From positions 1 to 64,000 of IMG/VR virus record IMGVR_UViG_3300002143_000235: a stretch of 64,000 bases of DNA. One strand, given 5' to 3'. The translations under genes were made by a program, and so were the position numbers. The stretch's first letter is position 1. Each line of letters starts with the position of its first letter. Positions 50,460-60,179 of the stretch are shown one piece after another. The notes below the pieces were generated by a model. The model saw only the letters and a list, made by a program, of their open reading frames with translations, did no database searches and was not told the origin of the DNA.

Positions 50460-50675
50460 TCAACTCATATAATTAGCATGGTTGCTCACAGTAAAACACA
50501 ATTCCAATGCATATATAAATTTTCTTATAACATTATCTTTATTTGCATCACTTACAATTGGTCCACCTTTTCCTTTTTCTGTAAACGACATTGTATAGGA
50601 TCTTCCGTCAAAAGCAATAGTAGCATGTTTAACCATCTCCACTCCATCCTTCAACCCAAAAAAGAAATTGGTCAA
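50460..50675 (-). CDS. hypothetical protein
   Basis: 71 aa ORF co-directional with neighbours. Confidence 0.5.
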   Translation of the reverse strand: MTNFFFGLKDGVEMVKHATIAFDGRSYTMSFTEKGKGGPIVSDANKDNVIRKFIYALELCFTVSNHANYMS

Positions 50676-50713
50676 GCACCAAGCCGTTGAAGTAGTAGAT
50701 TATGTCTATAGTT

Positions 50714-51649
50714 TCAAATGTGTTCGTGTTTATTCATATTTTTTCTTTTAAAGCATTTGTTTTCATAAAATTCAGGCATAAAACGTTTCATCCAACCATT
50801 AACTTTTTGATATGGTTTTTCAATCAATTTAGCAACACTTTGTACCCAACCAGTTTTAGAAAAATCAATATTGCTATTAATAATTTTTTCAATTTTTATT
50901 TTTTCAATTTGATTATATATTTCAGTAACTGCTTTATTATAATCATAGCGTTTACCATATTTAGCTTTTGACTTTTTTATTTCTGTATAAAAATATAATC
51001 GATCATCATAATTTTTCATCTTAGATGTACCTATAAAATCTAAAAATTCAGCAATTTTTAGATTTATATCATCATCATAGCGAATTCTAAAAATTCGCCA
51101 ACCTTGTTCTGTTAAATACAAATCACGTTTTATATCATGTTCTACTCTTTTATTACCATTAATAAAATGACATTTACCGTCTAACTCAACTGCGACTTTT
51201 TCATTTATAAATGCAAAATCAATAAAATATGGAAATACACAATATTCAGATACAACATCATATTTTTTAAATATATCAATAGCTGTAGCCTTATCAAAAA
51301 AAGATGATTCTAAAAAAGACATTTGTCCTAAACTTCTTCTTTCCCAAGCTGTTTTACCAGTACGTTTTTTTAAATAATCAACTCGTTTAATTCGCATTTT
51401 TTCGCGTGTTTCATCGGTAATAATTATTTGTGATCTAAGTTTTTTATAACAATTATTATCACCACATGTTTTATTAAAACTAATTCCACCACGATGTGAA
51501 CATAATTTATTACATATTGTACATTTTGGAATCACAAAATTTTCATATTGCTGATAATATTCCAAAACTGAAATATCATATCTTTTTAAATATTGTGTTA
51601 AAGCTTTAATACTAATTAATTCTTTATTATCTATTTTACAAAATACCAT
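50714..51649 (-). CDS. DUF559/Vsr-like putative homing endonuclease with Zn-finger N-terminus
   Basis: CTIC..TCG..C; YFIDFAF..VAVELDGKCH..HDIKRD..GWRIFRI; adjacent to tRNA cluster. Confidence 0.75.
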   Translation of the reverse strand: MVFCKIDNKELISIKALTQYLKRYDISVLEYYQQYENFVIPKCTICNKLCSHRGGISFNKTCGDNNCYKKLRSQIIITDETREKMRIKRVDYLKKRTGKTAWERRSLGQMSFLESSFFDKATAIDIFKKYDVVSEYCVFPYFIDFAFINEKVAVELDGKCHFINGNKRVEHDIKRDLYLTEQGWRIFRIRYDDDINLKIAEFLDFIGTSKMKNYDDRLYFYTEIKKSKAKYGKRYDYNKAVTEIYNQIEKIKIEKIINSNIDFSKTGWVQSVAKLIEKPYQKVNGWMKRFMPEFYENKCFKRKNMNKHEHI

Positions 51650-51700
51650 GTTTTACTTTTATATATCAAACTTTAATTATCAGTCAATGCCATGATTTTG

Positions 51701-51787
51701 TTATCCAGGTAGGGCTCGAACCTACAGTGGGATTACTCCTCTCTTCCGATTCAAAGTCGGACGTGTTGCCAATTACACCACTGGATA
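51701..51787 (-). tRNA. tRNA-Gln(UUG) with long variable arm
   Basis: TATCCAG/CTGGATA acceptor (U1-A72), TCCGA-CTTTGAA-TCGGA, 19-nt variable region, GTAGG-TTCGAGC-CCTAC. Confidence 0.88.
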
Positions 51788-51840
51788 ATTTAATATTTTT
51801 TATTGTAACACCACGTGATGCCATTTCACTAATCAACAAT

Positions 51841-51870
51841 AAAAAAAGCCGTTCAATTTTGAACGGCTTT
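51841..51870 (-). terminator. attenuator terminator upstream of tRNA-Gln
   Basis: AAAGCCGTTCAA-AA-TTGAACGGCTTTTTTT on minus strand. Confidence 0.85.
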
Positions 51871-51897
51871 AGTAAACTTTAAAGAATACAATACCAT

Positions 51898-51951
51898 TCA
51901 ATCCGAAAATTGTTGCTGTTGAAGTTGTTGGTATGTGCTCATTAATGTCAT
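51898..51951 (-). promoter_or_regulatory. Gln-rich leader peptide MTLMSTYQQLQQQQFSD*
   Basis: 6 Gln codons (5 CAA, 1 CAG) in 7 positions; TTGAATGGT across the stop is complementary to terminator arm GCCGTTCAA. Confidence 0.8.
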
Positions 51952-51961
51952 AATCGTTCTT

Positions 51962-52357
51962 TTAAAAATTATTCTTGTTATTAAATAGCTGATAGTCATA
52001 TGACAAGAATGCATATGTCTTTGCTTTATTATAAATACTAATCCTAGTATCATTTACTTCTTCAATTGTTGGTGATTCTGATAACAGATATCTACTTACC
52101 CAATCTGCTATTGGAATTGCCTGAATATTAAATTGTGCCACACTCCATTCCTGTCTTGTGTAAACTATAGGTGCATCATCCAATCTTCCTTCAAAAAGCA
52201 TGAAAAACTGTCGGTAATCGAAAGAATTATCATACGATGCTGGAAGCGGTGGATTTGAACTAATTTCAGGATAAAAAGTTTTTGAAGTCAAAATCTTTAT
52301 AATCTGTTGTTTATCAGCCAATGTTGCGCCGGTAATTTTAAAATATCTACTAGCCAT
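51962..52357 (-). CDS. hypothetical protein
   Basis: 131 aa ORF. Confidence 0.55.
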   Translation of the reverse strand: MASRYFKITGATLADKQQIIKILTSKTFYPEISSNPPLPASYDNSFDYRQFFMLFEGRLDDAPIVYTRQEWSVAQFNIQAIPIADWVSRYLLSESPTIEEVNDTRISIYNKAKTYAFLSYDYQLFNNKNNF

Positions 52358-52404
52358 CTGTGTTTTTTATTTATTGTTATATATTCATCGTCACAAATGA
52401 TTAA

Positions 52405-52797
52405 TTAAACACTATTACGTTTATCAAATAATTTCTGATTGTGTATTCGTTTTTTCTTATCAATTCTGTTTTGAAAATCTAGTAACAATGGTTCAGGAAT
52501 CTTGATGTTACGTGTAGTAAACTCTTTCAAGATTTCCTCTTCAGTAAAAGACCAATCTGCAATCCCGTCACTCCATTCATTTACCCATAAACCCCAACTC
52601 TTTTTTCCTGTCAATACACCTGTTAAGATATTTGAGTGTCTTGTAACAGGAATCTTTCCAAGTTGGTATTCACCATTTTCAATTTTTCTAAAACAAAATT
52701 TTCCGTCGTCCTCGTTTGGATCGAACTCTATCTTGACAGCAGAACCACAGAATGTACAAATACCTGATCTGTATATTTGAAGAAAGAAAGTGAACAT
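52405..52797 (-). CDS. hypothetical protein
   Basis: 130 aa ORF. Confidence 0.55.
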   Translation of the reverse strand: MFTFFLQIYRSGICTFCGSAVKIEFDPNEDDGKFCFRKIENGEYQLGKIPVTRHSNILTGVLTGKKSWGLWVNEWSDGIADWSFTEEEILKEFTTRNIKIPEPLLLDFQNRIDKKKRIHNQKLFDKRNSV

Positions 52798-52897
52798 CTC
52801 ATTGAAACCATCACTGTATTTCTTTAACTTCCTGTGTGTCCTACTGTCGTTTATGCGTCCAGCCTTTTCATCTCTATCATTTTATTTTTAATTTTTG

Positions 52898-52970
52898 TGG
52901 ATGTAAGGTGATTCGAACACCTATCAACATGACCAATACAGCGGTTATTTTACTATTAAAACTATACACC
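52898..52970 (-). pseudogene. tRNA-like gene with distorted anticodon arm (isotype undetermined)
   Basis: GGGTGTA/TACATCC acceptor, AGGTG-TTCGAAT-CACCT T arm, no canonical 5-bp/7-nt anticodon arm. Confidence 0.6.
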
Positions 52971-52981
52971 CATTTATAATG

Positions 52982-53055
52982 TGGAGAAGATGAGAATCGA
53001 ACTCACCACAAAAATCTTGCAAGGATTCTTCGCCAGCCTTGGTACATGCTTCCCC
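52982..53055 (-). tRNA. tRNA-Ala(UGC)
   Basis: GGGGAAG/CTTCTCC with G3:U70, GAATC-CTTGCAA-GATTT, A73. Confidence 0.85.
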
Positions 53056-53093
53056 AATTTCGGTTTTATTTCACAGACCGAAAACTGTCTCAG

Positions 53094-53167
53094 TGCGAGA
53101 AGTGGGACTCAAACCCACAACTCCTGACTTGGAAGGCCAGTACTCTAATCAATTGAGCTATTCTCGC
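53094..53167 (-). tRNA. tRNA-Gly(UCC)
   Basis: GCGAGAA/TTCTCGC, CTGGC-CTTCCAA-GTCAG, GTGGG-TTTGAGT-CCCAC. Confidence 0.9.
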
Positions 53168-53238
53168 AATTTCAATAAACCTCTTTTTGTCTCAATAAAC
53201 TTTAACACTTTATCGTTACAATTTTTACTTTATTGTTG

Positions 53239-53311
53239 TACACCCTGCAGGATTCGAACCTGCGACATCTTCCATGTAAAAGAAGCGCTCTACCAACTGA
53301 GCTAAGGATGC
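53239..53311 (-). tRNA. tRNA-Val(UAC)
   Basis: GCATCCT/AGGGTGT, CTTCT-TTTACAT-GGAAG, GCAGG-TTCGAAT-CCTGC. Confidence 0.92.
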
Positions 53312-53321
53312 ATATCTTTTG

Positions 53322-53392
53322 TACTCTTTGAAGGAATCGAACCTTCTCCCTTAGCATGTCGAGCTAGTATTCTACCGTTAAACCAAAAGAGC
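53322..53392 (-). tRNA. tRNA-Val(GAC), atypical C33
   Basis: GCTCTTT/AAAGAGT, TAGC-TCGACAT-GCTA, GAAGG-TTCGATT-CCTTC. Confidence 0.75.
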
Positions 53393-53400
53393 ATAAAATG

Positions 53401-53428
53401 AAAAAGTCCGGCGGGTTGGCCAGACTTT
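53401..53428 (-). terminator. attenuator terminator upstream of tRNA array
   Basis: AAAGTCTGGC-CAACCC-GCCGGACTTTTT on minus strand, 8 nt before tRNA-Val. Confidence 0.75.
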
Positions 53429-53448
53429 CAAATGTTATTATTTAAATT

Positions 53449-53532
53449 TTAACATAGAATGATCTGGCTGGGAAGTCTCCCGGCTTGGCCTTGCACCGCT
53501 TGTGCTACTACTATGTTAAAAATTGTTTTCAT
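53449..53532 (-). promoter_or_regulatory. leader peptide MKTIFNIVVAQAVQGQAGRLPSQIILC*
   Basis: 11 consecutive codons are all Val/Ala/Gln/Gly; GCCAGAT can pair with terminator arm GTCTGGC; promoter TATATTTG at 53585. Confidence 0.7.
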
Positions 53533-53642
53533 GTTTATTATATTGTATATATCAAGAAAGTTTGTTCCTTCTATCAATTTTTTACAAATATACGTCTTAT
53601 TTTTTAATTAACGAAATATATTTGCATTTTTTTATTAATTAA

Positions 53643-54200
53643 TCATGATACGACCCATGCATTTCCATATGTCTTGCATATAGCTCGGCATCGTTCTAAA
53701 AATTCATTAAACTCCTCATCAGAATTAAATTCTTCAGAATTATCAAAAGCATCAGAAAAATGTCGTGACAATACGTTATTGGCCCAATCGTAATCTTTAC
53801 CTTCAGCAATGTGCATATCTATATCAATTACACCATCATATTGAAGTGCCACCACTTTAGCCAACAATAGACTTAATTCATAGGCATCTGTTACTAATCC
53901 TGTCTGTGCTGATTTTGCAGGTGACATAACTTTAAAAGATTCATTCATCCATTTTTCTTTTGGATTTTTGATATCAAGTTTATCAAGTTCTTTTTCAGTT
54001 ACAACTTTGTAATTTTTATCACCATCGAAATCTTTTAATGCATCTTTTGCATCATTTTTAAATTCCCATCCTGATTCAACTTTCTTTTTAGAAATATTAA
54101 CTACAAAGAATTTATAAGCTTCAACGTCTTTCTTGTATTGTTTATCAGCCTTCTTTCCTTCATTTATGAATTGCTTAAACTGATTAAATTCTGTTATCAT
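53643..54200 (-). CDS. putative head-internal two-module protein (true start 54200)
   Basis: MITEFNQFKQFINEG; internal WMNES; TATATAA at 54223. Confidence 0.7.
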   Translation of the reverse strand: MITEFNQFKQFINEGKKADKQYKKDVEAYKFFVVNISKKKVESGWEFKNDAKDALKDFDGDKNYKVVTEKELDKLDIKNPKEKWMNESFKVMSPAKSAQTGLVTDAYELSLLLAKVVALQYDGVIDIDMHIAEGKDYDWANNVLSRHFSDAFDNSEEFNSDEEFNEFLERCRAICKTYGNAWVVS

Positions 54201-54237
54201 ATAGTTTATTGGTATCTTTTTTATTATATAGTATTTA

Positions 54238-55242
54238 TCAGAAATAAGTACGTGGTTCGATGATGATTCCAAGCTTTGGAATAGATTTTGTCTTCTCCTT
54301 GCTGTAGAAATTGAATTTAACAATCGGTCCCATGAAATGAAATTCTGCACCGTCTTCAAGATTAAATGCATCAATCAATTGTTTGTACTCTTCATTCGCG
54401 ATCTTTGGTGAAATAATAAATCTATCACCTGGTTTAAGTTCCATTGGTTTTAATGTATTTTCAAACTCAAGACTGAATTTTCTTGAACTTCCTTTTTCAT
54501 CAATAACAAGACGACGAATTTTCTTTTTCTTTGGACCTTCAGGATAGTTAACCAAAATCTCCATACCATCATAAATCACAAATTCTTTATTCGGTACAAG
54601 TTTCTTTAATTCCATTGGAATAGCTGTTGGTGAATATATAGCAGCTTTTGGTTGATTTTTGTTTTCTTCAGCATTTAATTCTTTTTCTGCTGGTGTTAAC
54701 ATTGTGTCTGGATTATTCTTAAGATTAACAGCAGGGTAAAGTTTTGCAAACTCAATATCAGTAATATCTAAATCAATAATTGTATTCTTACGTTTACGAT
54801 CATCAAATGATAAAACATTCATATCAATATCACGAAGCTGCTTGAGTTCCTTTGCATCATGCGCAAGTATTTTATTATAAATATCTCGGTTACTAAATGA
54901 AAAAGGATAAAGTAATAATGTTACCACTGTCTGATTCACAACAAGTGCAACATAAACATTACCAACACTCTTATCAATTTGAATTTCTGCTTGAATTAAT
55001 CTACCACCTTGACGAAAATAAAGATTTCCAAATGTTATAGCTATCGGTGAAATGGCTGTTGCTGTCTTATCTAATATATTCAATCCATAATGATACATTG
55101 CCTTACGGAAACGGTACTCAGCTTTTTGTGGATCATCCAACTTATTTAAAATTACTGCGTTACGTATTCTAAGACTAAAACGGTTATCACTATCATATGC
55201 ATAATGCTTAGAGAAGAAGAATTCGTTAATGGATGTAATCAT
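54238..55242 (-). CDS. leader-family protein (likely start 55242)
   Basis: MITSINEFFFS. Confidence 0.65.
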   Translation of the reverse strand: MITSINEFFFSKHYAYDSDNRFSLRIRNAVILNKLDDPQKAEYRFRKAMYHYGLNILDKTATAISPIAITFGNLYFRQGGRLIQAEIQIDKSVGNVYVALVVNQTVVTLLLYPFSFSNRDIYNKILAHDAKELKQLRDIDMNVLSFDDRKRKNTIIDLDITDIEFAKLYPAVNLKNNPDTMLTPAEKELNAEENKNQPKAAIYSPTAIPMELKKLVPNKEFVIYDGMEILVNYPEGPKKKKIRRLVIDEKGSSRKFSLEFENTLKPMELKPGDRFIISPKIANEEYKQLIDAFNLEDGAEFHFMGPIVKFNFYSKEKTKSIPKLGIIIEPRTYF

Positions 55243-56930: not shown

Positions 56931-59900
56931 ATGGCAAAGGAAAAAAGCATTGAAGATGTTTACAAAAAACTCTCACAGGAAGAACACGTATTAGTAAGAC
57001 CTGATACCTATGTAGGTTCAGTAATACCACAAGAAAAAATGATGTGGTGCTACGAAAACGATGCAATTATAAAAAGAAACGTGCGGTATATTCCAGCATT
57101 TTTAAAATTATTTGATGAGATTCTTACAAATGCTTCTGACCATGTACAACGTGGTGGAAAAGTAAAAAATATTAAGGTAAACATTACAGATGATTGGAAA
57201 ATCACCGTATGGAATGATGGAACGGGTATTCCTGTTGTTTTACATAAAGAACACAATGTCTATATTCCTGAATTAATTTTTGGTCACTTATTAACTGGAT
57301 CTAATTATGATGATGATGATGAGCGTTTTGGTGCGGGTCGTAATGGTCTTGGATCTAAACTTGTATCAATATTCTCAAAAGAATTTGTTATTGATTGTGC
57401 AGACGGAAAGAAACATTACTTTCAAACATTTAGTAACAACCTTGCTATCAAATCTGTGCCTGAAATAAAAGCAAGTAAACAATCATATACATCTATTTCA
57501 TATCTAACTGATTTTGATCGTTTACCAATCAAGGGATTGGAACGTGACACACTTGCACTTTGTATGAAACGTATGCTTGATATTGCTGTATACAATCCTA
57601 CAGTTAATGTGTATTTCAATGATGAATTGATTAAAATTAATAATCTTGCAGACTGGTGTCAGATGCACATCGATAATGATGACGAATTGTTTTTAGAGAC
57701 TGTAAATGATAGATGGTCAATTGGTCTTGCTCAATCTAAATCAGATGTGTTTGATCACTGTTCTATTGTTAATGGTAACACGACATGGCAAGGGGGAACA
57801 CATGTTGATGCTATTATGAATCAAGTTGTAAAGAAACTTGTTGAAGACCTTACAAAAGGAAATAAAGGTATCAAGATTAAACCAGTTGATGTAAAAAATA
57901 AGTTTCATTTATTTTTGGTTTGTAAAGTAGCAAACCCAACTTTTGATACACAAACAAAAGAAAACTTAACTATCAAGATTCAGGATAAATTTGAACTTTC
58001 TGAGAAGTTGTACAAACAACTCATGAAGTCAGAAATTATTAAATCTATTATTGAGTGGGTTCAATTACGTGAACAGGCTGAATTAAACAAACTGAATAAA
58101 AAATCTGCTGGTAAGACAGTACGTATTGAAAAACTTGTTGATGCACACAAAGCAGGAACAAATGAAGGTCACAAATGTTCAATTATTTTAGCTGAAGGTG
58201 ACTCAGCTCTTCAATCTGTACTTTCAGGTTTATCTGTTGTTGGTCGTGATTATTTTGGTGTCTTTCCACTCAAGGGTAAAGTATTGAATGTTCGTGATGT
58301 TAAAATAAGTCGTATAACAGACAACGAAGAAATTAGAAAGATCTTACAATTTATTGGACTTGTTCCAGGTAAAAAATATGAATCACTAAGTGAACTTCGT
58401 TATGGACGTGTTATATTCATGACGGATGCCGATGTCGATGGAACTTCAATTAAAGGACTACTTATCAACTTCATTCATAATTTTTGGCCGGAGCTTCTTG
58501 AGCTTGGATTCTGTTTTGAGTTCATTACACCGATCGTGGTTGCACGAAAAGCAAAACTAGTAAAAGAATACTACAACTTATCAAACTATCACACAGACAA
58601 AGAAAATGGTAAACTGAACGGCTACACGATTAAATATTATAAAGGTCTTGGAACAATTAAAGGTGAAGAGATTAAAATCATGTTCAAGGATTTGAACAAA
58701 CACCTTATTCCGTTTGAATACAATGCAATTCGTGACAATGATAAAATTGACATGGTATTTAGAAAAGATCGTGCAAACGATCGTCGTGAATGGTTGCTTG
58801 GTTACAAAGGTGAGATCATTCCAGACAAGTTTGGAAAATCAAATCGCATTGATGAATTTATCGATACAGAATTCATTCAGTTCTCGAATGCTGATAACAT
58901 TCGTTCTATTCCAGGAATGATTGATGGATTTAAACCATCACAACGTAAGATCATGTTTGCAGCTTTTAAGAAGCTTGGACATACAGAGCGAGATGAAATC
59001 AAGGTAGCACAATTTGGTGCTTACACAGCTGAGGTGAGTAGTTACCATCACGGTGAGGTATCATTGATGCAAGCAATTGTTGGAATGGCACAGGATTTTG
59101 TAGGAGCAAACAATCTTTCACTATTAATGCCATCTGGTCAATTTGGAACAAGAACAAATCCAAGTGCAAGTGCAAGTCCTCGTTATATTTTTACATACTT
59201 GAATCCGTTAACACGTTACATATTCAGAAAAGAAGATGATTCAATCTTGAATTACCTCAATGAAGATGGTCAGAATATTGAACCAGAATTTTATCTTCCT
59301 ATTATTCCAATGCTTTTGGTTAATGGTGCAGCAGGGATTGGTACAGGGTGGTCAACAGACATTCCAAAATACGATCCAATGGATCTCATCGAAATTGTAA
59401 AACGTAAACTTGTTAAGGAAAACTTAAAATATCAAGTTAGTCCATCATATAAAGGTTGGAAAGGTGAATTAGATTGGAATGAAGAAAAAAATAGTTATAC
59501 ATCAAAAGGAATATTTAAAACATCTAAGAAAGGTGTAATTGTTACAGAATTACCGATTGATATATCAACTGACAAATTCATCGCAACACTTGACAAATTA
59601 GTTGATGAAAAAAAGATTAAATCATATATTGATAACTCTACAGATACAACAGTTAATGTCGAGGTTGTTTTAAATGGTGTGAGCAAAGATGTTGCAGGGT
59701 TGCTAAAATTAAGTAACAGTATCTCAATGAATAACATGAACACTTTCTTGGATAACAAGATTGTGAAGTGGACAACAACTGAAGACATGATTAACACATG
59801 GATTGATATCAGACTTAGTTGGTACGAAAAGCGTAAGATTCAATGGATGAGTGTTTTGGAACAACAGTTTGATCGTTACGATAATTTGCTTGGATTTATC

Positions 59901-60179
59901 AAGGGTGTAATTGATGGTGAAATTTTAATCAATAATCGAAAGAAAGACGTGATTATAAAAGATCTTGAAACAATGGACTTTATGAAAATTAATGATAGTT
60001 ATGATTACCTCTTGAACATCCCAGTTTATCACTTTACGACTGAAAAGTTTGATGAATACAAAAAGATGGCAAAAAATATGCGATTAGAACTTAAAGAATA
60101 CAAATTGATGAATCCTGCTGATATATGGCAGAAAGATTTAAAGGAACTTGAAGAACAACTGATTAAGGCTGGTTATTAA
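56931..60179 (+). CDS. type IIA DNA topoisomerase, single-chain (B+A fused)
   Basis: RPDTYVGS, GRNGLG, AEGDSA, PLKGK, MTDADVDG, YYKGLGT, DGFKPSQRK, YHHGE, catalytic SPRYIFT. Confidence 0.96.
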   Translation: MAKEKSIEDVYKKLSQEEHVLVRPDTYVGSVIPQEKMMWCYENDAIIKRNVRYIPAFLKLFDEILTNASDHVQRGGKVKNIKVNITDDWKITVWNDGTGIPVVLHKEHNVYIPELIFGHLLTGSNYDDDDERFGAGRNGLGSKLVSIFSKEFVIDCADGKKHYFQTFSNNLAIKSVPEIKASKQSYTSISYLTDFDRLPIKGLERDTLALCMKRMLDIAVYNPTVNVYFNDELIKINNLADWCQMHIDNDDELFLETVNDRWSIGLAQSKSDVFDHCSIVNGNTTWQGGTHVDAIMNQVVKKLVEDLTKGNKGIKIKPVDVKNKFHLFLVCKVANPTFDTQTKENLTIKIQDKFELSEKLYKQLMKSEIIKSIIEWVQLREQAELNKLNKKSAGKTVRIEKLVDAHKAGTNEGHKCSIILAEGDSALQSVLSGLSVVGRDYFGVFPLKGKVLNVRDVKISRITDNEEIRKILQFIGLVPGKKYESLSELRYGRVIFMTDADVDGTSIKGLLINFIHNFWPELLELGFCFEFITPIVVARKAKLVKEYYNLSNYHTDKENGKLNGYTIKYYKGLGTIKGEEIKIMFKDLNKHLIPFEYNAIRDNDKIDMVFRKDRANDRREWLLGYKGEIIPDKFGKSNRIDEFIDTEFIQFSNADNIRSIPGMIDGFKPSQRKIMFAAFKKLGHTERDEIKVAQFGAYTAEVSSYHHGEVSLMQAIVGMAQDFVGANNLSLLMPSGQFGTRTNPSASASPRYIFTYLNPLTRYIFRKEDDSILNYLNEDGQNIEPEFYLPIIPMLLVNGAAGIGTGWSTDIPKYDPMDLIEIVKRKLVKENLKYQVSPSYKGWKGELDWNEEKNSYTSKGIFKTSKKGVIVTELPIDISTDKFIATLDKLVDEKKIKSYIDNSTDTTVNVEVVLNGVSKDVAGLLKLSNSISMNNMNTFLDNKIVKWTTTEDMINTWIDIRLSWYEKRKIQWMSVLEQQFDRYDNLLGFIKGVIDGEILINNRKKDVIIKDLETMDFMKINDSYDYLLNIPVYHFTTEKFDEYKKMAKNMRLELKEYKLMNPADIWQKDLKELEEQLIKAGY

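What the first reader, a model, noticed from the sequence alone, without database searches (positions are those of the whole stretch)
52982..53592. Second attenuator: multi-amino-acid leader matching the downstream tRNA array
Seen: promoter TATATTTG (53585), then a 27-aa leader whose codons 8-18 (GTA GTA GCA CAA GCG GTG CAA GGC CAA GCC GGG) are exclusively Val/Ala/Gln/Gly. A terminator follows 8 nt before tRNA-Val(GAC), Val(UAC), Gly(UCC), Ala(UGC), with tRNA-Gln further down. GCCAGAT (53462-53468) can pair with terminator arm GTCTGGC. An 11-bp TTTTAACATAG/CTATGTTAAAA stem brackets the leader. Inference: an OR-gate sensing exactly the amino acids whose tRNAs follow. Two independent cases in one cluster make chance unlikely.
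Basis: partly seen in the sequence, partly recalled or inferred. Interest (0 to 1): 0.8.

Follow-up and report, generated by a model that had tools for sequence, protein, structure and literature searches.

The report
Leader-peptide attenuator controlling phage tRNA genes
A large uncultured phage puts a tiny gene, written in just the amino acids whose tRNAs follow it, plus a transcription stop signal in front of its tRNA genes; dozens of related phages do the same with other amino-acid sets, so these phages probably make their own tRNAs only when the cell runs short of them.

Summary
On the minus strand, a TAnnTTTG promoter box (53592-53585) precedes a 27-codon ORF (53532-53449). Codons 8-18 are only Val/Ala/Gln/Gly. 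A strong intrinsic terminator (53429-53402) ends 9 nt before tRNA-Val, Val, Gly and an Ala-like tRNA; tRNA-Gln lies further on behind its own Gln-rich leader and terminator.

I fetched about 70 related big-phage loci. The same unit (promoter box, small ORF with an MKTIxNI-like start, terminator 16-30 nt after the stop, then tRNAs) recurs in roughly 14 classes by my informal count. In each class the ORF core uses the amino acids of the tRNAs downstream, for example F/E/D/A before Phe-Glu-Asp-Ala. No swapped pairing reached the observed match, and the other reading frames show almost none.

Core changes are mostly third-position or stay within the set; the tail does not evolve like coding sequence. 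Folding with the ribosome at different positions gives the classical 1:2, 2:3 and 3:4 alternatives, each with compensatory changes.

Best reading: ribosome-mediated attenuation makes phage tRNA synthesis respond to charged-tRNA supply. No transcript or experimental data exist, and seven literature searches found no earlier description.

The parts
53585..53592 (-). Candidate promoter -7 box TATATTTG (Bacteroidota-type TAnnTTTG), 60 nt upstream of the leader ATG. It is the only such box on this strand between 53700 and 51600.
   Evidence: A TAnnTTTG lies 42-116 nt upstream of 25 of 27 related leaders, against about 9% expected from the window-wide frequency.
53449..53532 (-). Leader ORF: 27 codons plus a TAA stop, N-terminus MKTIFNI, no Shine-Dalgarno sequence.
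   Evidence: The ORF is kept in L003, L007 and L013, with two different 3-nt indels and a TAA to TGA stop change. The N-terminal motif is shared by about 30 leaders.
53479..53511 (-). Regulatory core, codons 8-18: VVAQAVQGQAG, only Val/Ala/Gln/Gly.
   Evidence: It is the only run of 8 or more residues from that set in all six frames of the window. Core composition tracks tRNA content across relatives.
53511..53521 (-). Segment 1: 5' arm of the 11-bp 1:2 stem (anti-antiterminator), inside codons 4-8.
   Evidence: Compensatory changes at alignment pairs 22-76 and 14-83.
53470..53481 (-). Small conserved hairpin GGGAGACUUCCC just after the core. Its role is unknown; it may be a pause hairpin.
   Evidence: It is kept with wobble changes in L003 and L013.
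53419..53468 (-). Antiterminator (2:3): GCCAGAU plus UUC plus AUGUUA pairing with UAACAU plus GAA plus GUCUGGC. Its 5' strand covers the last leader codons and the stop codon. Its 3' strand is the terminator's 5' arm.
   Evidence: It is the MFE of the nascent RNA when a ribosome is held at codons 10-14 (-14.3 kcal/mol), and it is absent with the ribosome at the stop. The duplex beats shuffles: z -3.55, p 0.003. Compensatory pair 83-96.
53394..53429 (-). Intrinsic terminator (3:4): 11-bp stem, 6-nt loop (53429-53402), then a T-run (53401-53394).
   Evidence: Compensatory pair 118-127 in L013.
52898..53392 (-). Proximal regulated tRNA genes: Val(GAC) 53392-53321, Val(UAC) 53311-53238, Gly(UCC) 53167-53093, Ala(UGC)-like 53055-52979, and an odd tRNA 52971-52898.
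51962..52797 (-). Two protein genes inside the operon: ORF130 (52797-52405) and ORF131 (52357-51962), both of unknown function.
   Evidence: ORF130 homologues lie inside tRNA arrays in nearly all of about 70 relatives.
51898..51951 (-).
   Evidence: The L003 orthologue starts MKTLNTN and precedes three tRNA-Gln genes.
51845..51870 (-). Terminator of the inner unit, 27 nt after its stop codon. Its 5' arm pairs with a segment that overlaps the stop codon (antiterminator dG -10.1, p 0.012).
51700..51787 (-). tRNA-Gln(UUG), 88 nt with an extra arm; the distal regulated gene.

Best explanation
This is a ribosome-mediated (leader-peptide) transcription attenuator that gates a phage tRNA operon.

Transcription probably starts at the TATATTTG box and runs into a 27-codon ORF. 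Three outcomes follow.
- If charged Val-, Ala-, Gln- and Gly-tRNAs are plentiful, the ribosome runs to the stop codon and covers segment 2 (the last codons and the stop). The terminator hairpin then forms and RNA polymerase stops 9 nt before the first tRNA gene.
- If any of these charged tRNAs is scarce, the ribosome stalls in the core (codons 8 to about 15). It holds segment 1, which leaves segment 2 free to pair with the terminator's 5' arm as that arm emerges. The antiterminator forms, polymerase reads through, and the phage makes Val, Val, Gly and Ala tRNAs.
- If nothing translates the leader, segments 1 and 2 pair through the 11-bp stem and termination is the default.

Further down the same transcript, a second Gln-only leader with its own terminator gates tRNA-Gln. 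This explains why the outer leader also carries Gln codons.

The product tRNAs relieve the stall, so the circuit is a negative feedback loop that matches phage tRNA output to demand.

Shown here: the anatomy, its conservation, the tracking of tRNA content by core composition, the codon-type evolution of the core, and the alternative helices with covariation. Inferred: that the ORF is translated, that stalling causes read-through, and that the host is Bacteroidota-like.
For: (1) Anatomy in the window.

(2) Conserved architecture. Stem sequences are unrelated between classes. 25 of 27 have a TAnnTTTG box upstream.

(3) Composition tracks tRNA content. Class representatives score 0.637, against a derangement mean of 0.198 and maximum of 0.341, with 0 of 1854 reaching the observed value. 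The N-terminus scores 0.07 and the tail 0.16. In the motif-independent scan, 24 units reach 0.8, against 4.7 +/- 2.0 for swapped sets and 0 and 1 for the other frames. In the published huge phage LR756502, 3 of 3 units match, and they are nested.

(4) Coding-type selection acts on the core only. In the F/E/D/A class, core nucleotide differences by codon position are 18/26/66, and 31 of 41 residue changes stay within the set. The tail shows 56/64/51. In the window's own class, two independent 3-nt indels keep the frame, and the stop stays in place as TAA or TGA.

(5) Alternative structures. The 2:3 complementarity beats shuffles (p<0.05) in 12 of 26 units and the 1:2 complementarity in 16 of 26, against about 1.3 expected. 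Constrained folds give the three expected states in all four orthologues and in the Gln unit.

(6) Covariation in every helix. Column 83 changes together with both of its alternative partners, 14 and 96. Column 118 keeps its pair with both 65 and 127.

(7) No other promoter box lies on this strand across the operon, and there is no room for a promoter between the terminator and the first tRNA.
Against: - There is no transcript, ribosome or reporter data. The RNA-labelled runs that share words are probably DNA and cover mostly the tRNAs.
- At equilibrium the terminator beats the window's antiterminator by about 3 kcal/mol (-17.3 against -14.3), so read-through would have to be kinetic.
- In 14 of 26 units, notably most of the F/E/D/A class and the I/A/E/G/Y class, I could not show 2:3 complementarity above shuffles. 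Their switch may use a geometry I did not model, or may work differently.
- Leader codons are not biased toward exact matches with the downstream anticodons beyond general phage codon usage: 153 observed against 166.5 expected.
- Matches are imperfect. Some cores contain residues without a nearby tRNA, such as Glu in L047, and the odd tRNA at 52971-52898 has no obvious counterpart in the leader.
- In four units the first tRNA lies 346-778 nt beyond the terminator.
- The related units are not phylogenetically independent. Only the roughly 14 classes (my count) are, and I defined the classes by eye.
- The host and its transcription-translation coupling are unknown.
Confidence: 0.8

Rival explanations
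1. Translation of the small ORF does sense tRNA supply, but the output is not a classical RNA-switch attenuation. For example, a stalled ribosome could change RNA processing or stability, or Rho access, or the terminator could be constitutive and leaky while the ORF tunes something else.
For: 2:3 complementarity is not above shuffles in 14 of 26 units. The terminator is thermodynamically stronger than the antiterminator in the window. There is no direct read-through evidence.
Against: The stop-to-terminator spacing is tightly constrained at 16-30 nt. The antiterminator is significant in 12 of 26 units across many classes. Single nucleotides covary with both alternative partners. The three-state folds are reproduced in five units.
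Confidence: 0.1
2. The ORF encodes a functional small peptide with its own promoter and terminator, such as a membrane peptide or a RiPP-like precursor with a conserved leader and variable core, that merely lies next to tRNA genes.
For: The N-terminus is conserved, the core is variable, and the C-terminus is often Cys. The unit is a self-contained promoter-ORF-terminator.
Against: This rival does not predict that core composition follows the identity of the downstream tRNAs in about 14 classes. Residues permute within the set rather than keeping their positions, and the tail does not evolve like coding sequence. Pfam and PHROGs searches of the neighbouring proteins found no modification enzymes. 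In the window there is no room for a separate tRNA promoter after the terminator.
Confidence: 0.04
3. The GC-rich stretch bracketed by the 11-bp stem is a structured non-coding RNA or a degenerate tRNA-like gene, and the ORF is incidental. This was my first suspicion.
For: It folds into a cloverleaf-like multiloop with z -4.0. It sits in a tRNA array, and it is GC-richer than the roughly 31% GC genome.
Against: There is no ARAGORN or Rfam hit at E up to 10. Indels come in threes and the stop is preserved. Only one reading frame carries the tRNA-matched composition. The inner small hairpins are not kept in L003 or L013.
Confidence: 0.03
4. Coincidence: a low-complexity ORF happens to precede tRNAs for the same amino acids.
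For: Stretches of 13-17 residues using four or fewer amino acids occur in every frame of the window.
Against: It is the only V/A/Q/G run in six frames, and all permutation and frame controls argue against chance.
Confidence: 0.01

Closest known systems
Multivalent leader-peptide attenuators of amino-acid biosynthesis operons (ilvL of ilvGMEDA with Ile/Val/Leu codons, thrL with Thr/Ile codons; also trpL, hisL, leuL, pheL). From established knowledge.
   Same: A short ORF rich in regulatory codons sits between the promoter and the regulated genes, followed by an intrinsic terminator. Mutually exclusive 1:2, 2:3 and 3:4 helices are set by ribosome position, and termination is the default without translation. 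More than one amino acid is sensed by a single leader.
   Different: The regulated genes here are tRNA genes, not enzymes, and the element is in a phage. The leader lists the content of the array, from 1 up to about 13 amino acids (for example L058). Units are nested as outer and inner leaders, and they share an MKTIxNI-like N-terminus across classes. No Rfam leader model matches.
pheM leader of the pheST operon (phenylalanyl-tRNA synthetase) in E. coli. From established knowledge.
   Same: Leader-peptide attenuation is applied to a gene of the translation apparatus, giving a feedback loop through the charged-tRNA supply.
   Different: It controls a synthetase, senses a single amino acid, and is chromosomal.
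T-box riboswitches
   Same: They couple expression of translation-related genes to the charging state of a specific tRNA through a terminator/antiterminator choice.
   Different: A T-box binds uncharged tRNA directly and has no leader ORF. No T-box match was found here. Here the sensing would be through the ribosome and for several amino acids at once.
Bacteroid-trp leader motif in Rfam, a predicted leader-peptide attenuator in Bacteroidota. Recalled from memory, not tested beyond the Rfam scan.
   Same: It shows that leader-peptide attenuation is plausible in the likely host phylum, which lacks Shine-Dalgarno-led initiation.
   Different: It is a Trp biosynthesis leader. There is no sequence or model match in the window.
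Phage tRNA clusters as described so far (T4 tRNA region; tRNA arrays of T5-like, myco- and huge phages). Discussed in PMC10264068, PMC11555353, PMC11464382 and PMC11025619.
   Same: Arrays of phage tRNA genes are thought to compensate for codon usage or to replace host tRNAs that defence nucleases have cut.
   Different: Two of these papers (PMC10264068 and PMC13015707) were checked by full-text term search and do not mention attenuators, leaders or terminators in front of the arrays. The others were seen only as search results. No cultured phage in the collection carries ORF130 or an F/E/D/A-class unit.

Membership tests
Ribosome-mediated (leader-peptide) transcription attenuator | Short ORF in the transcribed leader between the promoter and the regulated genes | tested here: met
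   27-codon ORF at 53532-53449, 60 nt after a TAnnTTTG box and 56 nt before the first tRNA.
Ribosome-mediated (leader-peptide) transcription attenuator | Regulatory codons in the ORF correspond to the amino acid(s) linked to the regulated genes | tested here: met
   Core codons 8-18 are only V/A/Q/G, and the operon tRNAs are Val, Val, Gly, Ala-like and Gln. Family-wide permutation and frame controls support this.
Ribosome-mediated (leader-peptide) transcription attenuator | Intrinsic terminator between the ORF and the regulated genes | tested here: met
   Terminator at 53429-53402 plus a T-run, dG -15.2. Present in 26 of 27 related units at +16 to +30 nt from the stop.
Ribosome-mediated (leader-peptide) transcription attenuator | Antiterminator that excludes the terminator and is masked by a ribosome at the stop codon | tested here: met
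   Predicted helix at 53468-53419: p 0.003 against shuffles, MFE of the nascent RNA with the ribosome at codons 10-14, absent with the ribosome at the stop, and compensatory pair 83-96. Family-wide it is significant in only 12 of 26 units.
Ribosome-mediated (leader-peptide) transcription attenuator | Upstream 1:2 helix overlapped by the ORF, so that termination is the default without translation | tested here: met
   11-bp stem 53521-53511 / 53457-53447, with compensatory pairs 22-76 and 14-83. Significant in 16 of 26 units.
Ribosome-mediated (leader-peptide) transcription attenuator | Read-through increases when the ribosome stalls at the regulatory codons | not testable with these tools
   This needs reporters, in vitro coupled assays, Term-seq or ribosome profiling. 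No usable RNA data were found.
Curated Rfam leader families (His, Leu, Thr, Trp, Leu/Phe and Bacteroid-trp leaders) | Covariance-model match at the gathering score | tested here: not met
   There is no leader family hit in 50500-54500 at E up to 10, apart from a chance-level greA leader hit over the terminator (17.5 bits against a cut-off of 60).
T-box riboswitch | Specifier loop and T-box sequence, detected as an RF00230 match | tested here: not met
   No hit.
tRNA or tRNA-like gene, for the stretch 53524-53446 | Cloverleaf with canonical D and T arms recognised by ARAGORN or the Rfam tRNA model | tested here: not met
   No call from either tool. The stretch evolves codon-wise.

The most novel reading that the evidence does not exclude
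Big phages carry a programmable, hierarchical tRNA-supply sensor. Each tRNA array is preceded by a leader ORF that acts as a barcode of the array's amino acids, with inner leaders gating distal sub-arrays. The phage therefore switches on just those tRNAs whose charged host counterparts run short. One such situation is after host anticodon nucleases or phage-induced host shut-off deplete specific tRNAs, which would make the arrays an inducible counter-defence rather than a constitutive codon-usage supplement. The leaders would co-evolve with gain and loss of tRNA genes.
Probability: 0.3. Interest if true: 0.95.

Novelty: new variant of a known kind. Interest (0 to 1): 0.86.

Why it matters
Why phages carry tRNA genes has been debated for decades, with codon compensation, host shut-off and escape from tRNA-cutting defences all proposed (PMC10264068, PMC11555353, PMC11464382). 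How those genes are regulated has hardly been discussed in the papers I could search.

If these units work as the sequence suggests, three things follow.
- Phage tRNA output is demand-driven and self-limiting, which speaks directly to that debate.
- Textbook attenuation is extended to a new target class (tRNA genes), to viruses, and to leaders that sense up to a dozen amino acids in nested fashion.
- The leader becomes a readable annotation of which tRNAs belong to one transcription unit. That is useful for annotating the many huge-phage genomes that are currently unannotated, such as LR756502.

The units are also compact, modular sensors of charged-tRNA pools that could be reused as reporters.

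Tried and rejected
1. Giant-virus origin. I suspected this from the fused eukaryote-like topoisomerase II and an AAAATTGA upstream of the ORF. I rejected it because AAAATTGA is not enriched (19 found, 19.1 expected), gene packing and domains are phage-like, and the best topoisomerase hits are huge uncultured phages.

2. A tRNA-like or other non-coding RNA for 53524-53446. Rejected.

3. DNA-pattern baits. The leader core and the terminator found only the window's own contig in IMG/VR. In the metagenome collection they found one chance match inside a GC-rich bacterial gene, L009, which I discarded.

4. Flanking ORF243 as an anchor. It gave only three close relatives. ORF130 was the productive anchor.

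5. Codon-anticodon matching. There is no signal beyond phage codon usage. The per-amino-acid table in that output has mislabelled columns, so only the totals are used.

6. Transcript evidence. Both run searches gave shares of 0.14 or less among the runs I could use, and the laid contigs were short, probably DNA, and mostly over tRNAs.

7. Cultured model phage. None has ORF130 or an F/E/D/A-class unit.

8. Host from binned genomes. The three MAG hits (Methanobacterium, Paceibacterota, uncultured) look like mis-binned phage contigs. One has the same length as an IMG/VR contig already in hand.

9. ORF130 function. Pfam and PHROGs give nothing, and a confident AlphaFold model has no PDB fold match.

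10. The formal pair-count tool. I skipped it, to avoid typing long dot-bracket strings, and computed the same table in a script.
Full report
WHAT IS THERE. The window is part of a 313.7-kb IMG/VR contig. It has about 31% GC and phage-like gene content: ribonucleotide reductase, an SbcC-like ATPase, DUF932 and Big_13 domains. Its fused topoisomerase II is closest, at 40-45% identity, to the 636-735 kb 'uncultured phage' genomes LR756501-4. A giant-virus origin was considered and dropped.

Everything relevant is on the minus strand, in this order:
- a 243-codon gene ending at 53643;
- a TATATTTG box at 53592-53585;
- a 27-codon ORF at 53532-53449, whose codons 8-18 read VVAQAVQGQAG;
- an 11-bp stem joining codons 4-8 to the last codons and the stop;
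- a strong intrinsic terminator at 53429-53402 with a T-run;
- 9 nt later, tRNA-Val(GAC), then tRNA-Val(UAC), tRNA-Gly(UCC), an Ala(UGC)-like tRNA with a poor D stem, and one odd tRNA;
- two small protein genes, ORF130 and ORF131;
- a second small ORF with six Gln in 17 codons (51951-51898), with its own terminator (51870-51845);
- tRNA-Gln(UUG).

The two terminators are the only terminator-like sites in 51500-54500. The TATATTTG box is the only TAnnTTTG on this strand across the whole stretch. The V/A/Q/G core is the only run of 8 or more residues from that set in all six frames of the 64-kb window.

FIRST SUSPICION, REJECTED. The stretch is GC-rich, lies in a tRNA array and folds into a cloverleaf-like multiloop (z -4.0), so I first suspected a degenerate tRNA or another RNA gene. 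ARAGORN and an Rfam scan at E up to 10 find nothing there, and the comparative data below show codon-wise evolution.

CLOSE RELATIVES. The upstream gene led to two close relatives, L003-L006 and L007. nhmmer then found a more distant one, L013. All keep the whole unit. They differ from the window by two different 3-nt indels inside the ORF, and the stop stays at the same place but changes from TAA to TGA. That is how a translated sequence behaves.

THE FAMILY. ORF130 has 96 homologues. An alignment of them (A1) retrieved 68 IMG/VR loci, all large tRNA arrays in big-phage contigs.

I scanned these loci on both strands for the N-terminal motif alone, blind to context. This returned about 30 small ORFs that sit directly upstream of tRNA runs, and their cores are built from the amino acids of those tRNAs. 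Examples:
- a core made only of F/E/D/A before Phe-Glu-Asp-Ala arrays (ten loci, for example L015:3521 and L036:3502);
- I/A/E/G/Y before Tyr-Glu-Ile-Gly-Ala (L020:2793);
- L/V/C before Cys-Val-Leu (L015:220);
- G/A before Gly-Ala (L054:4490);
- Q before three tRNA-Gln genes (L003:5287).

The motif-independent scan added further classes:
- D/L/V/A/W/E before Asp-Glu-Val-Leu-Ala-Trp arrays (L044:1609);
- S/W/Y/P/E before Tyr-Pro-Ser-Trp-Glu (L035:2436);
- leaders that use many amino acids, most only once or twice, before very mixed arrays (L058:4354, L022:360).

The published, unannotated 642-kb genome LR756502 has three such units near its ORF130 homologue. All three match their arrays, and two are nested.

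STATISTICS.
- One representative for each of seven classes: 0.637 of core residues (positions 8-21) belong to the downstream tRNA set. All 1854 derangements give a mean of 0.198 and a maximum of 0.341. The N-terminus scores 0.07 and the tail 0.16.
- Motif-independent design. I took any ATG-ORF of 14-60 codons whose stop lies 8-40 nt before any terminator in a gap upstream of a tRNA run, which gave 52 unique units. 24 have an 11-residue window matching at 0.8 or more. Swapped tRNA sets give 4.7 +/- 2.0 (maximum 11). The same nucleotides read in the other two frames give 0 and 1.
- These tests undercount true matches, because ARAGORN misses odd tRNAs (such as the window's Ala-like gene) and some contigs end early.
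- The units are related by descent, so the independent evidence is the number of classes (about 14 by my count), not the number of units.

EVOLUTIONARY SIGNATURE. I compared six same-length members of the F/E/D/A class.
- Core nucleotide differences fall 18/26/66 on codon positions 1/2/3.
- 31 of 41 residue differences are swaps within the set, including non-conservative ones such as A for F or E.
- In the tail the differences are flat at 56/64/51.

So selection keeps which amino acids are used in the core, not their order. The tail behaves like RNA rather than protein. This argues against a functional peptide and for a codon sensor.

At the level of individual codons I found no preference for exact complements of the downstream anticodons beyond general phage codon usage: 153 observed against 166.5 expected.

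ARCHITECTURE. Stem sequences are unrelated between classes.

25 of 27 units have a TAnnTTTG box 42-116 nt upstream of the ATG. The window-wide frequency (102 hits on both strands in 64 kb, not enriched) predicts about 9%.

Shine-Dalgarno-like motifs are at background level in the window: 3 of 63 genes against 4 of 63 random sites. Both features fit a Bacteroidota-type host, but that is an inference. Binned-genome hits were uninformative.

THE SWITCH. With no ribosome, the window's leader folds into the 1:2 stem plus the terminator.

With positions up to 12 nt past an A site at codon 10 or 14 made unavailable, the nascent RNA (before the terminator's 3' arm exists) folds into a long imperfect hairpin at 53468-53419, at -14.3 kcal/mol. 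In it, GCCAGAU, UUC and AUGUUA pair with UAACAU, GAA and GUCUGGC, so the terminator's 5' arm is sequestered.

With the A site at codon 18 this drops to -8.1. With the ribosome at the stop codon only the terminator can form.

The same three states appear in L003, L007 and L013 and in the window's Gln unit, whose antiterminator overlaps its stop codon (dG -10.1, p 0.012).

Against shuffled segments, the window's 2:3 duplex has z -3.55 (p 0.003) and its 1:2 duplex p 0.06. Family-wide, 12 of 26 units reach p<0.05 for 2:3 and 16 of 26 for 1:2, against about 1.3 expected.

At equilibrium the terminator is about 3 kcal/mol more stable than the antiterminator in the window, and about equal in L003. 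The choice would therefore be kinetic, as in many attenuators.

COVARIATION. Among only four orthologues, every helix has a compensatory double change:
- 1:2 stem: pair 22-76 goes G-C to C-G, and pair 14-83 goes U-A to C-G;
- 2:3 antiterminator: pair 83-96 goes A-U to G-C;
- 3:4 terminator: pair 118-127 goes C-G to U-A.

Column 83 changes together with both of its alternative partners, 14 and 96, while keeping a stop codon. Column 118 keeps a pair with 65 in the antiterminator and with 127 in the terminator. Such dual-partner covariation is what mutually exclusive structures predict. The sample is small.

NESTING. The window's outer leader includes Gln codons although tRNA-Gln lies 1.6 kb away behind its own Gln-only leader. 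That inner leader has no promoter box of its own. LR756502 shows the same design: an outer E/T/I/G/Y/A leader, then an inner V/G/I/A leader before the Ile-Gly-Gly-Gly-Ala part. The simplest reading is one transcript with successive checkpoints.

HOW IT MOST LIKELY WORKS. It is a classical ribosome-mediated attenuation applied to tRNA genes. Fast translation of the leader gives termination. A stall at a core codon for any scarce charged tRNA gives read-through and synthesis of the array, and the new tRNAs then relieve the stall. The steps that are shown and those that are inferred are listed under Best explanation. I put 0.8 on this, 0.1 on a translation-dependent mechanism that is not the RNA switch I modelled, and little on the other rivals.

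COMPARISON WITH KNOWN SYSTEMS. It works like the multivalent ilvL and thrL attenuators and like pheM-pheST, and it meets every sequence-testable defining feature of leader-peptide attenuators. It is not a member of any curated Rfam leader family, nor a T-box.

What is new is the target (tRNA genes), the setting (phage genomes), the barcode-like breadth of the leaders, the nesting, and the shared N-terminal motif.

Seven full-text searches and two targeted full-text checks of recent phage-tRNA papers found no description of such units. That library omits most subscription journals, so prior mention elsewhere cannot be excluded.

LIMITS.
- There are no expression data and no cultured carrier, and the host is unknown.
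- The classes were defined by eye.
- The structures are predictions.
- The antiterminator is unproven for about half of the units.
- Four units have long spacers between the terminator and the first tRNA.

Noticed in passing
window 52898-52971 (-): A tRNA-like gene (Rfam tRNA 38.4 bits) that ARAGORN does not call. Its anticodon arm is oversized, and by my reading the loop has 8 nt. Relatives carry ARAGORN '???' tRNAs with 2- or 4-base anticodons (ga, agac, taag, ttcc). They also carry suppressor-type tRNAs: Stop(tta) in L025 and L053, and SeC(tca) in L031.
   Followed up: partly
window 52979-53055 (-): An Ala(UGC)-like tRNA with G3:U70 and a normal T arm but almost no D stem. ARAGORN does not call it and it is below the Rfam tRNA threshold; only a tmRNA-clan hit of 20 bits is reported. 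It is nevertheless 80-86% identical to annotated tRNA-Ala genes of Vibrio phages and mycobacteriophages.
   Followed up: partly
window 51700-51787 (-): tRNA-Gln(UUG) is 88 nt long, with an extra arm of about 15 nt in the variable region. This is unusual for a Gln tRNA. The L003 orthologues are of normal length.
   Followed up: no
window 52405-52797 (-), alignment A1: ORF130 is a 130-residue protein conserved in more than 90 relatives and lying inside tRNA arrays in nearly all of them. The AlphaFold model is confident (pLDDT 92.8) and mostly helical, but there is no Pfam, PHROG or PDB-fold match. It may be a tRNA-related factor co-transcribed with the arrays.
   Followed up: partly
window 50714-51649 (-): A 311-residue protein with a DUF559/Vsr-like endonuclease domain lies directly after tRNA-Gln. 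It is probably a homing endonuclease inserted at the edge of the array.
   Followed up: no
window 56931-60179 (+): A single-chain type IIA topoisomerase carries the eukaryote-type TOPRIM_C domain. It is 40-45% identical to those of the 636-735 kb uncultured huge phages, which places this phage near that group.
   Followed up: partly
window 53470-53481 (-): A small hairpin GGGAGACUUCCC lies immediately after the regulatory core and is kept with wobble-compatible changes in L003 and L013. It may be a transcription pause site that synchronises polymerase and ribosome, but this is untested.
   Followed up: no
L012, L028, L038, L047 (units at 2762, 2655, 1702, 2112): In these relatives the first tRNA lies 346-778 nt beyond the leader's terminator. 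Something, possibly an inserted gene, sits between the attenuator and the array.
   Followed up: no
L079 (Methanobacterium MAG), L080 (Paceibacterota MAG): Contigs of this phage group are deposited inside archaeal and CPR bacterial MAGs. One, at 362,763 bp, has the same length as an IMG/VR phage contig already in hand. This looks like mis-binning rather than host evidence.
   Followed up: no
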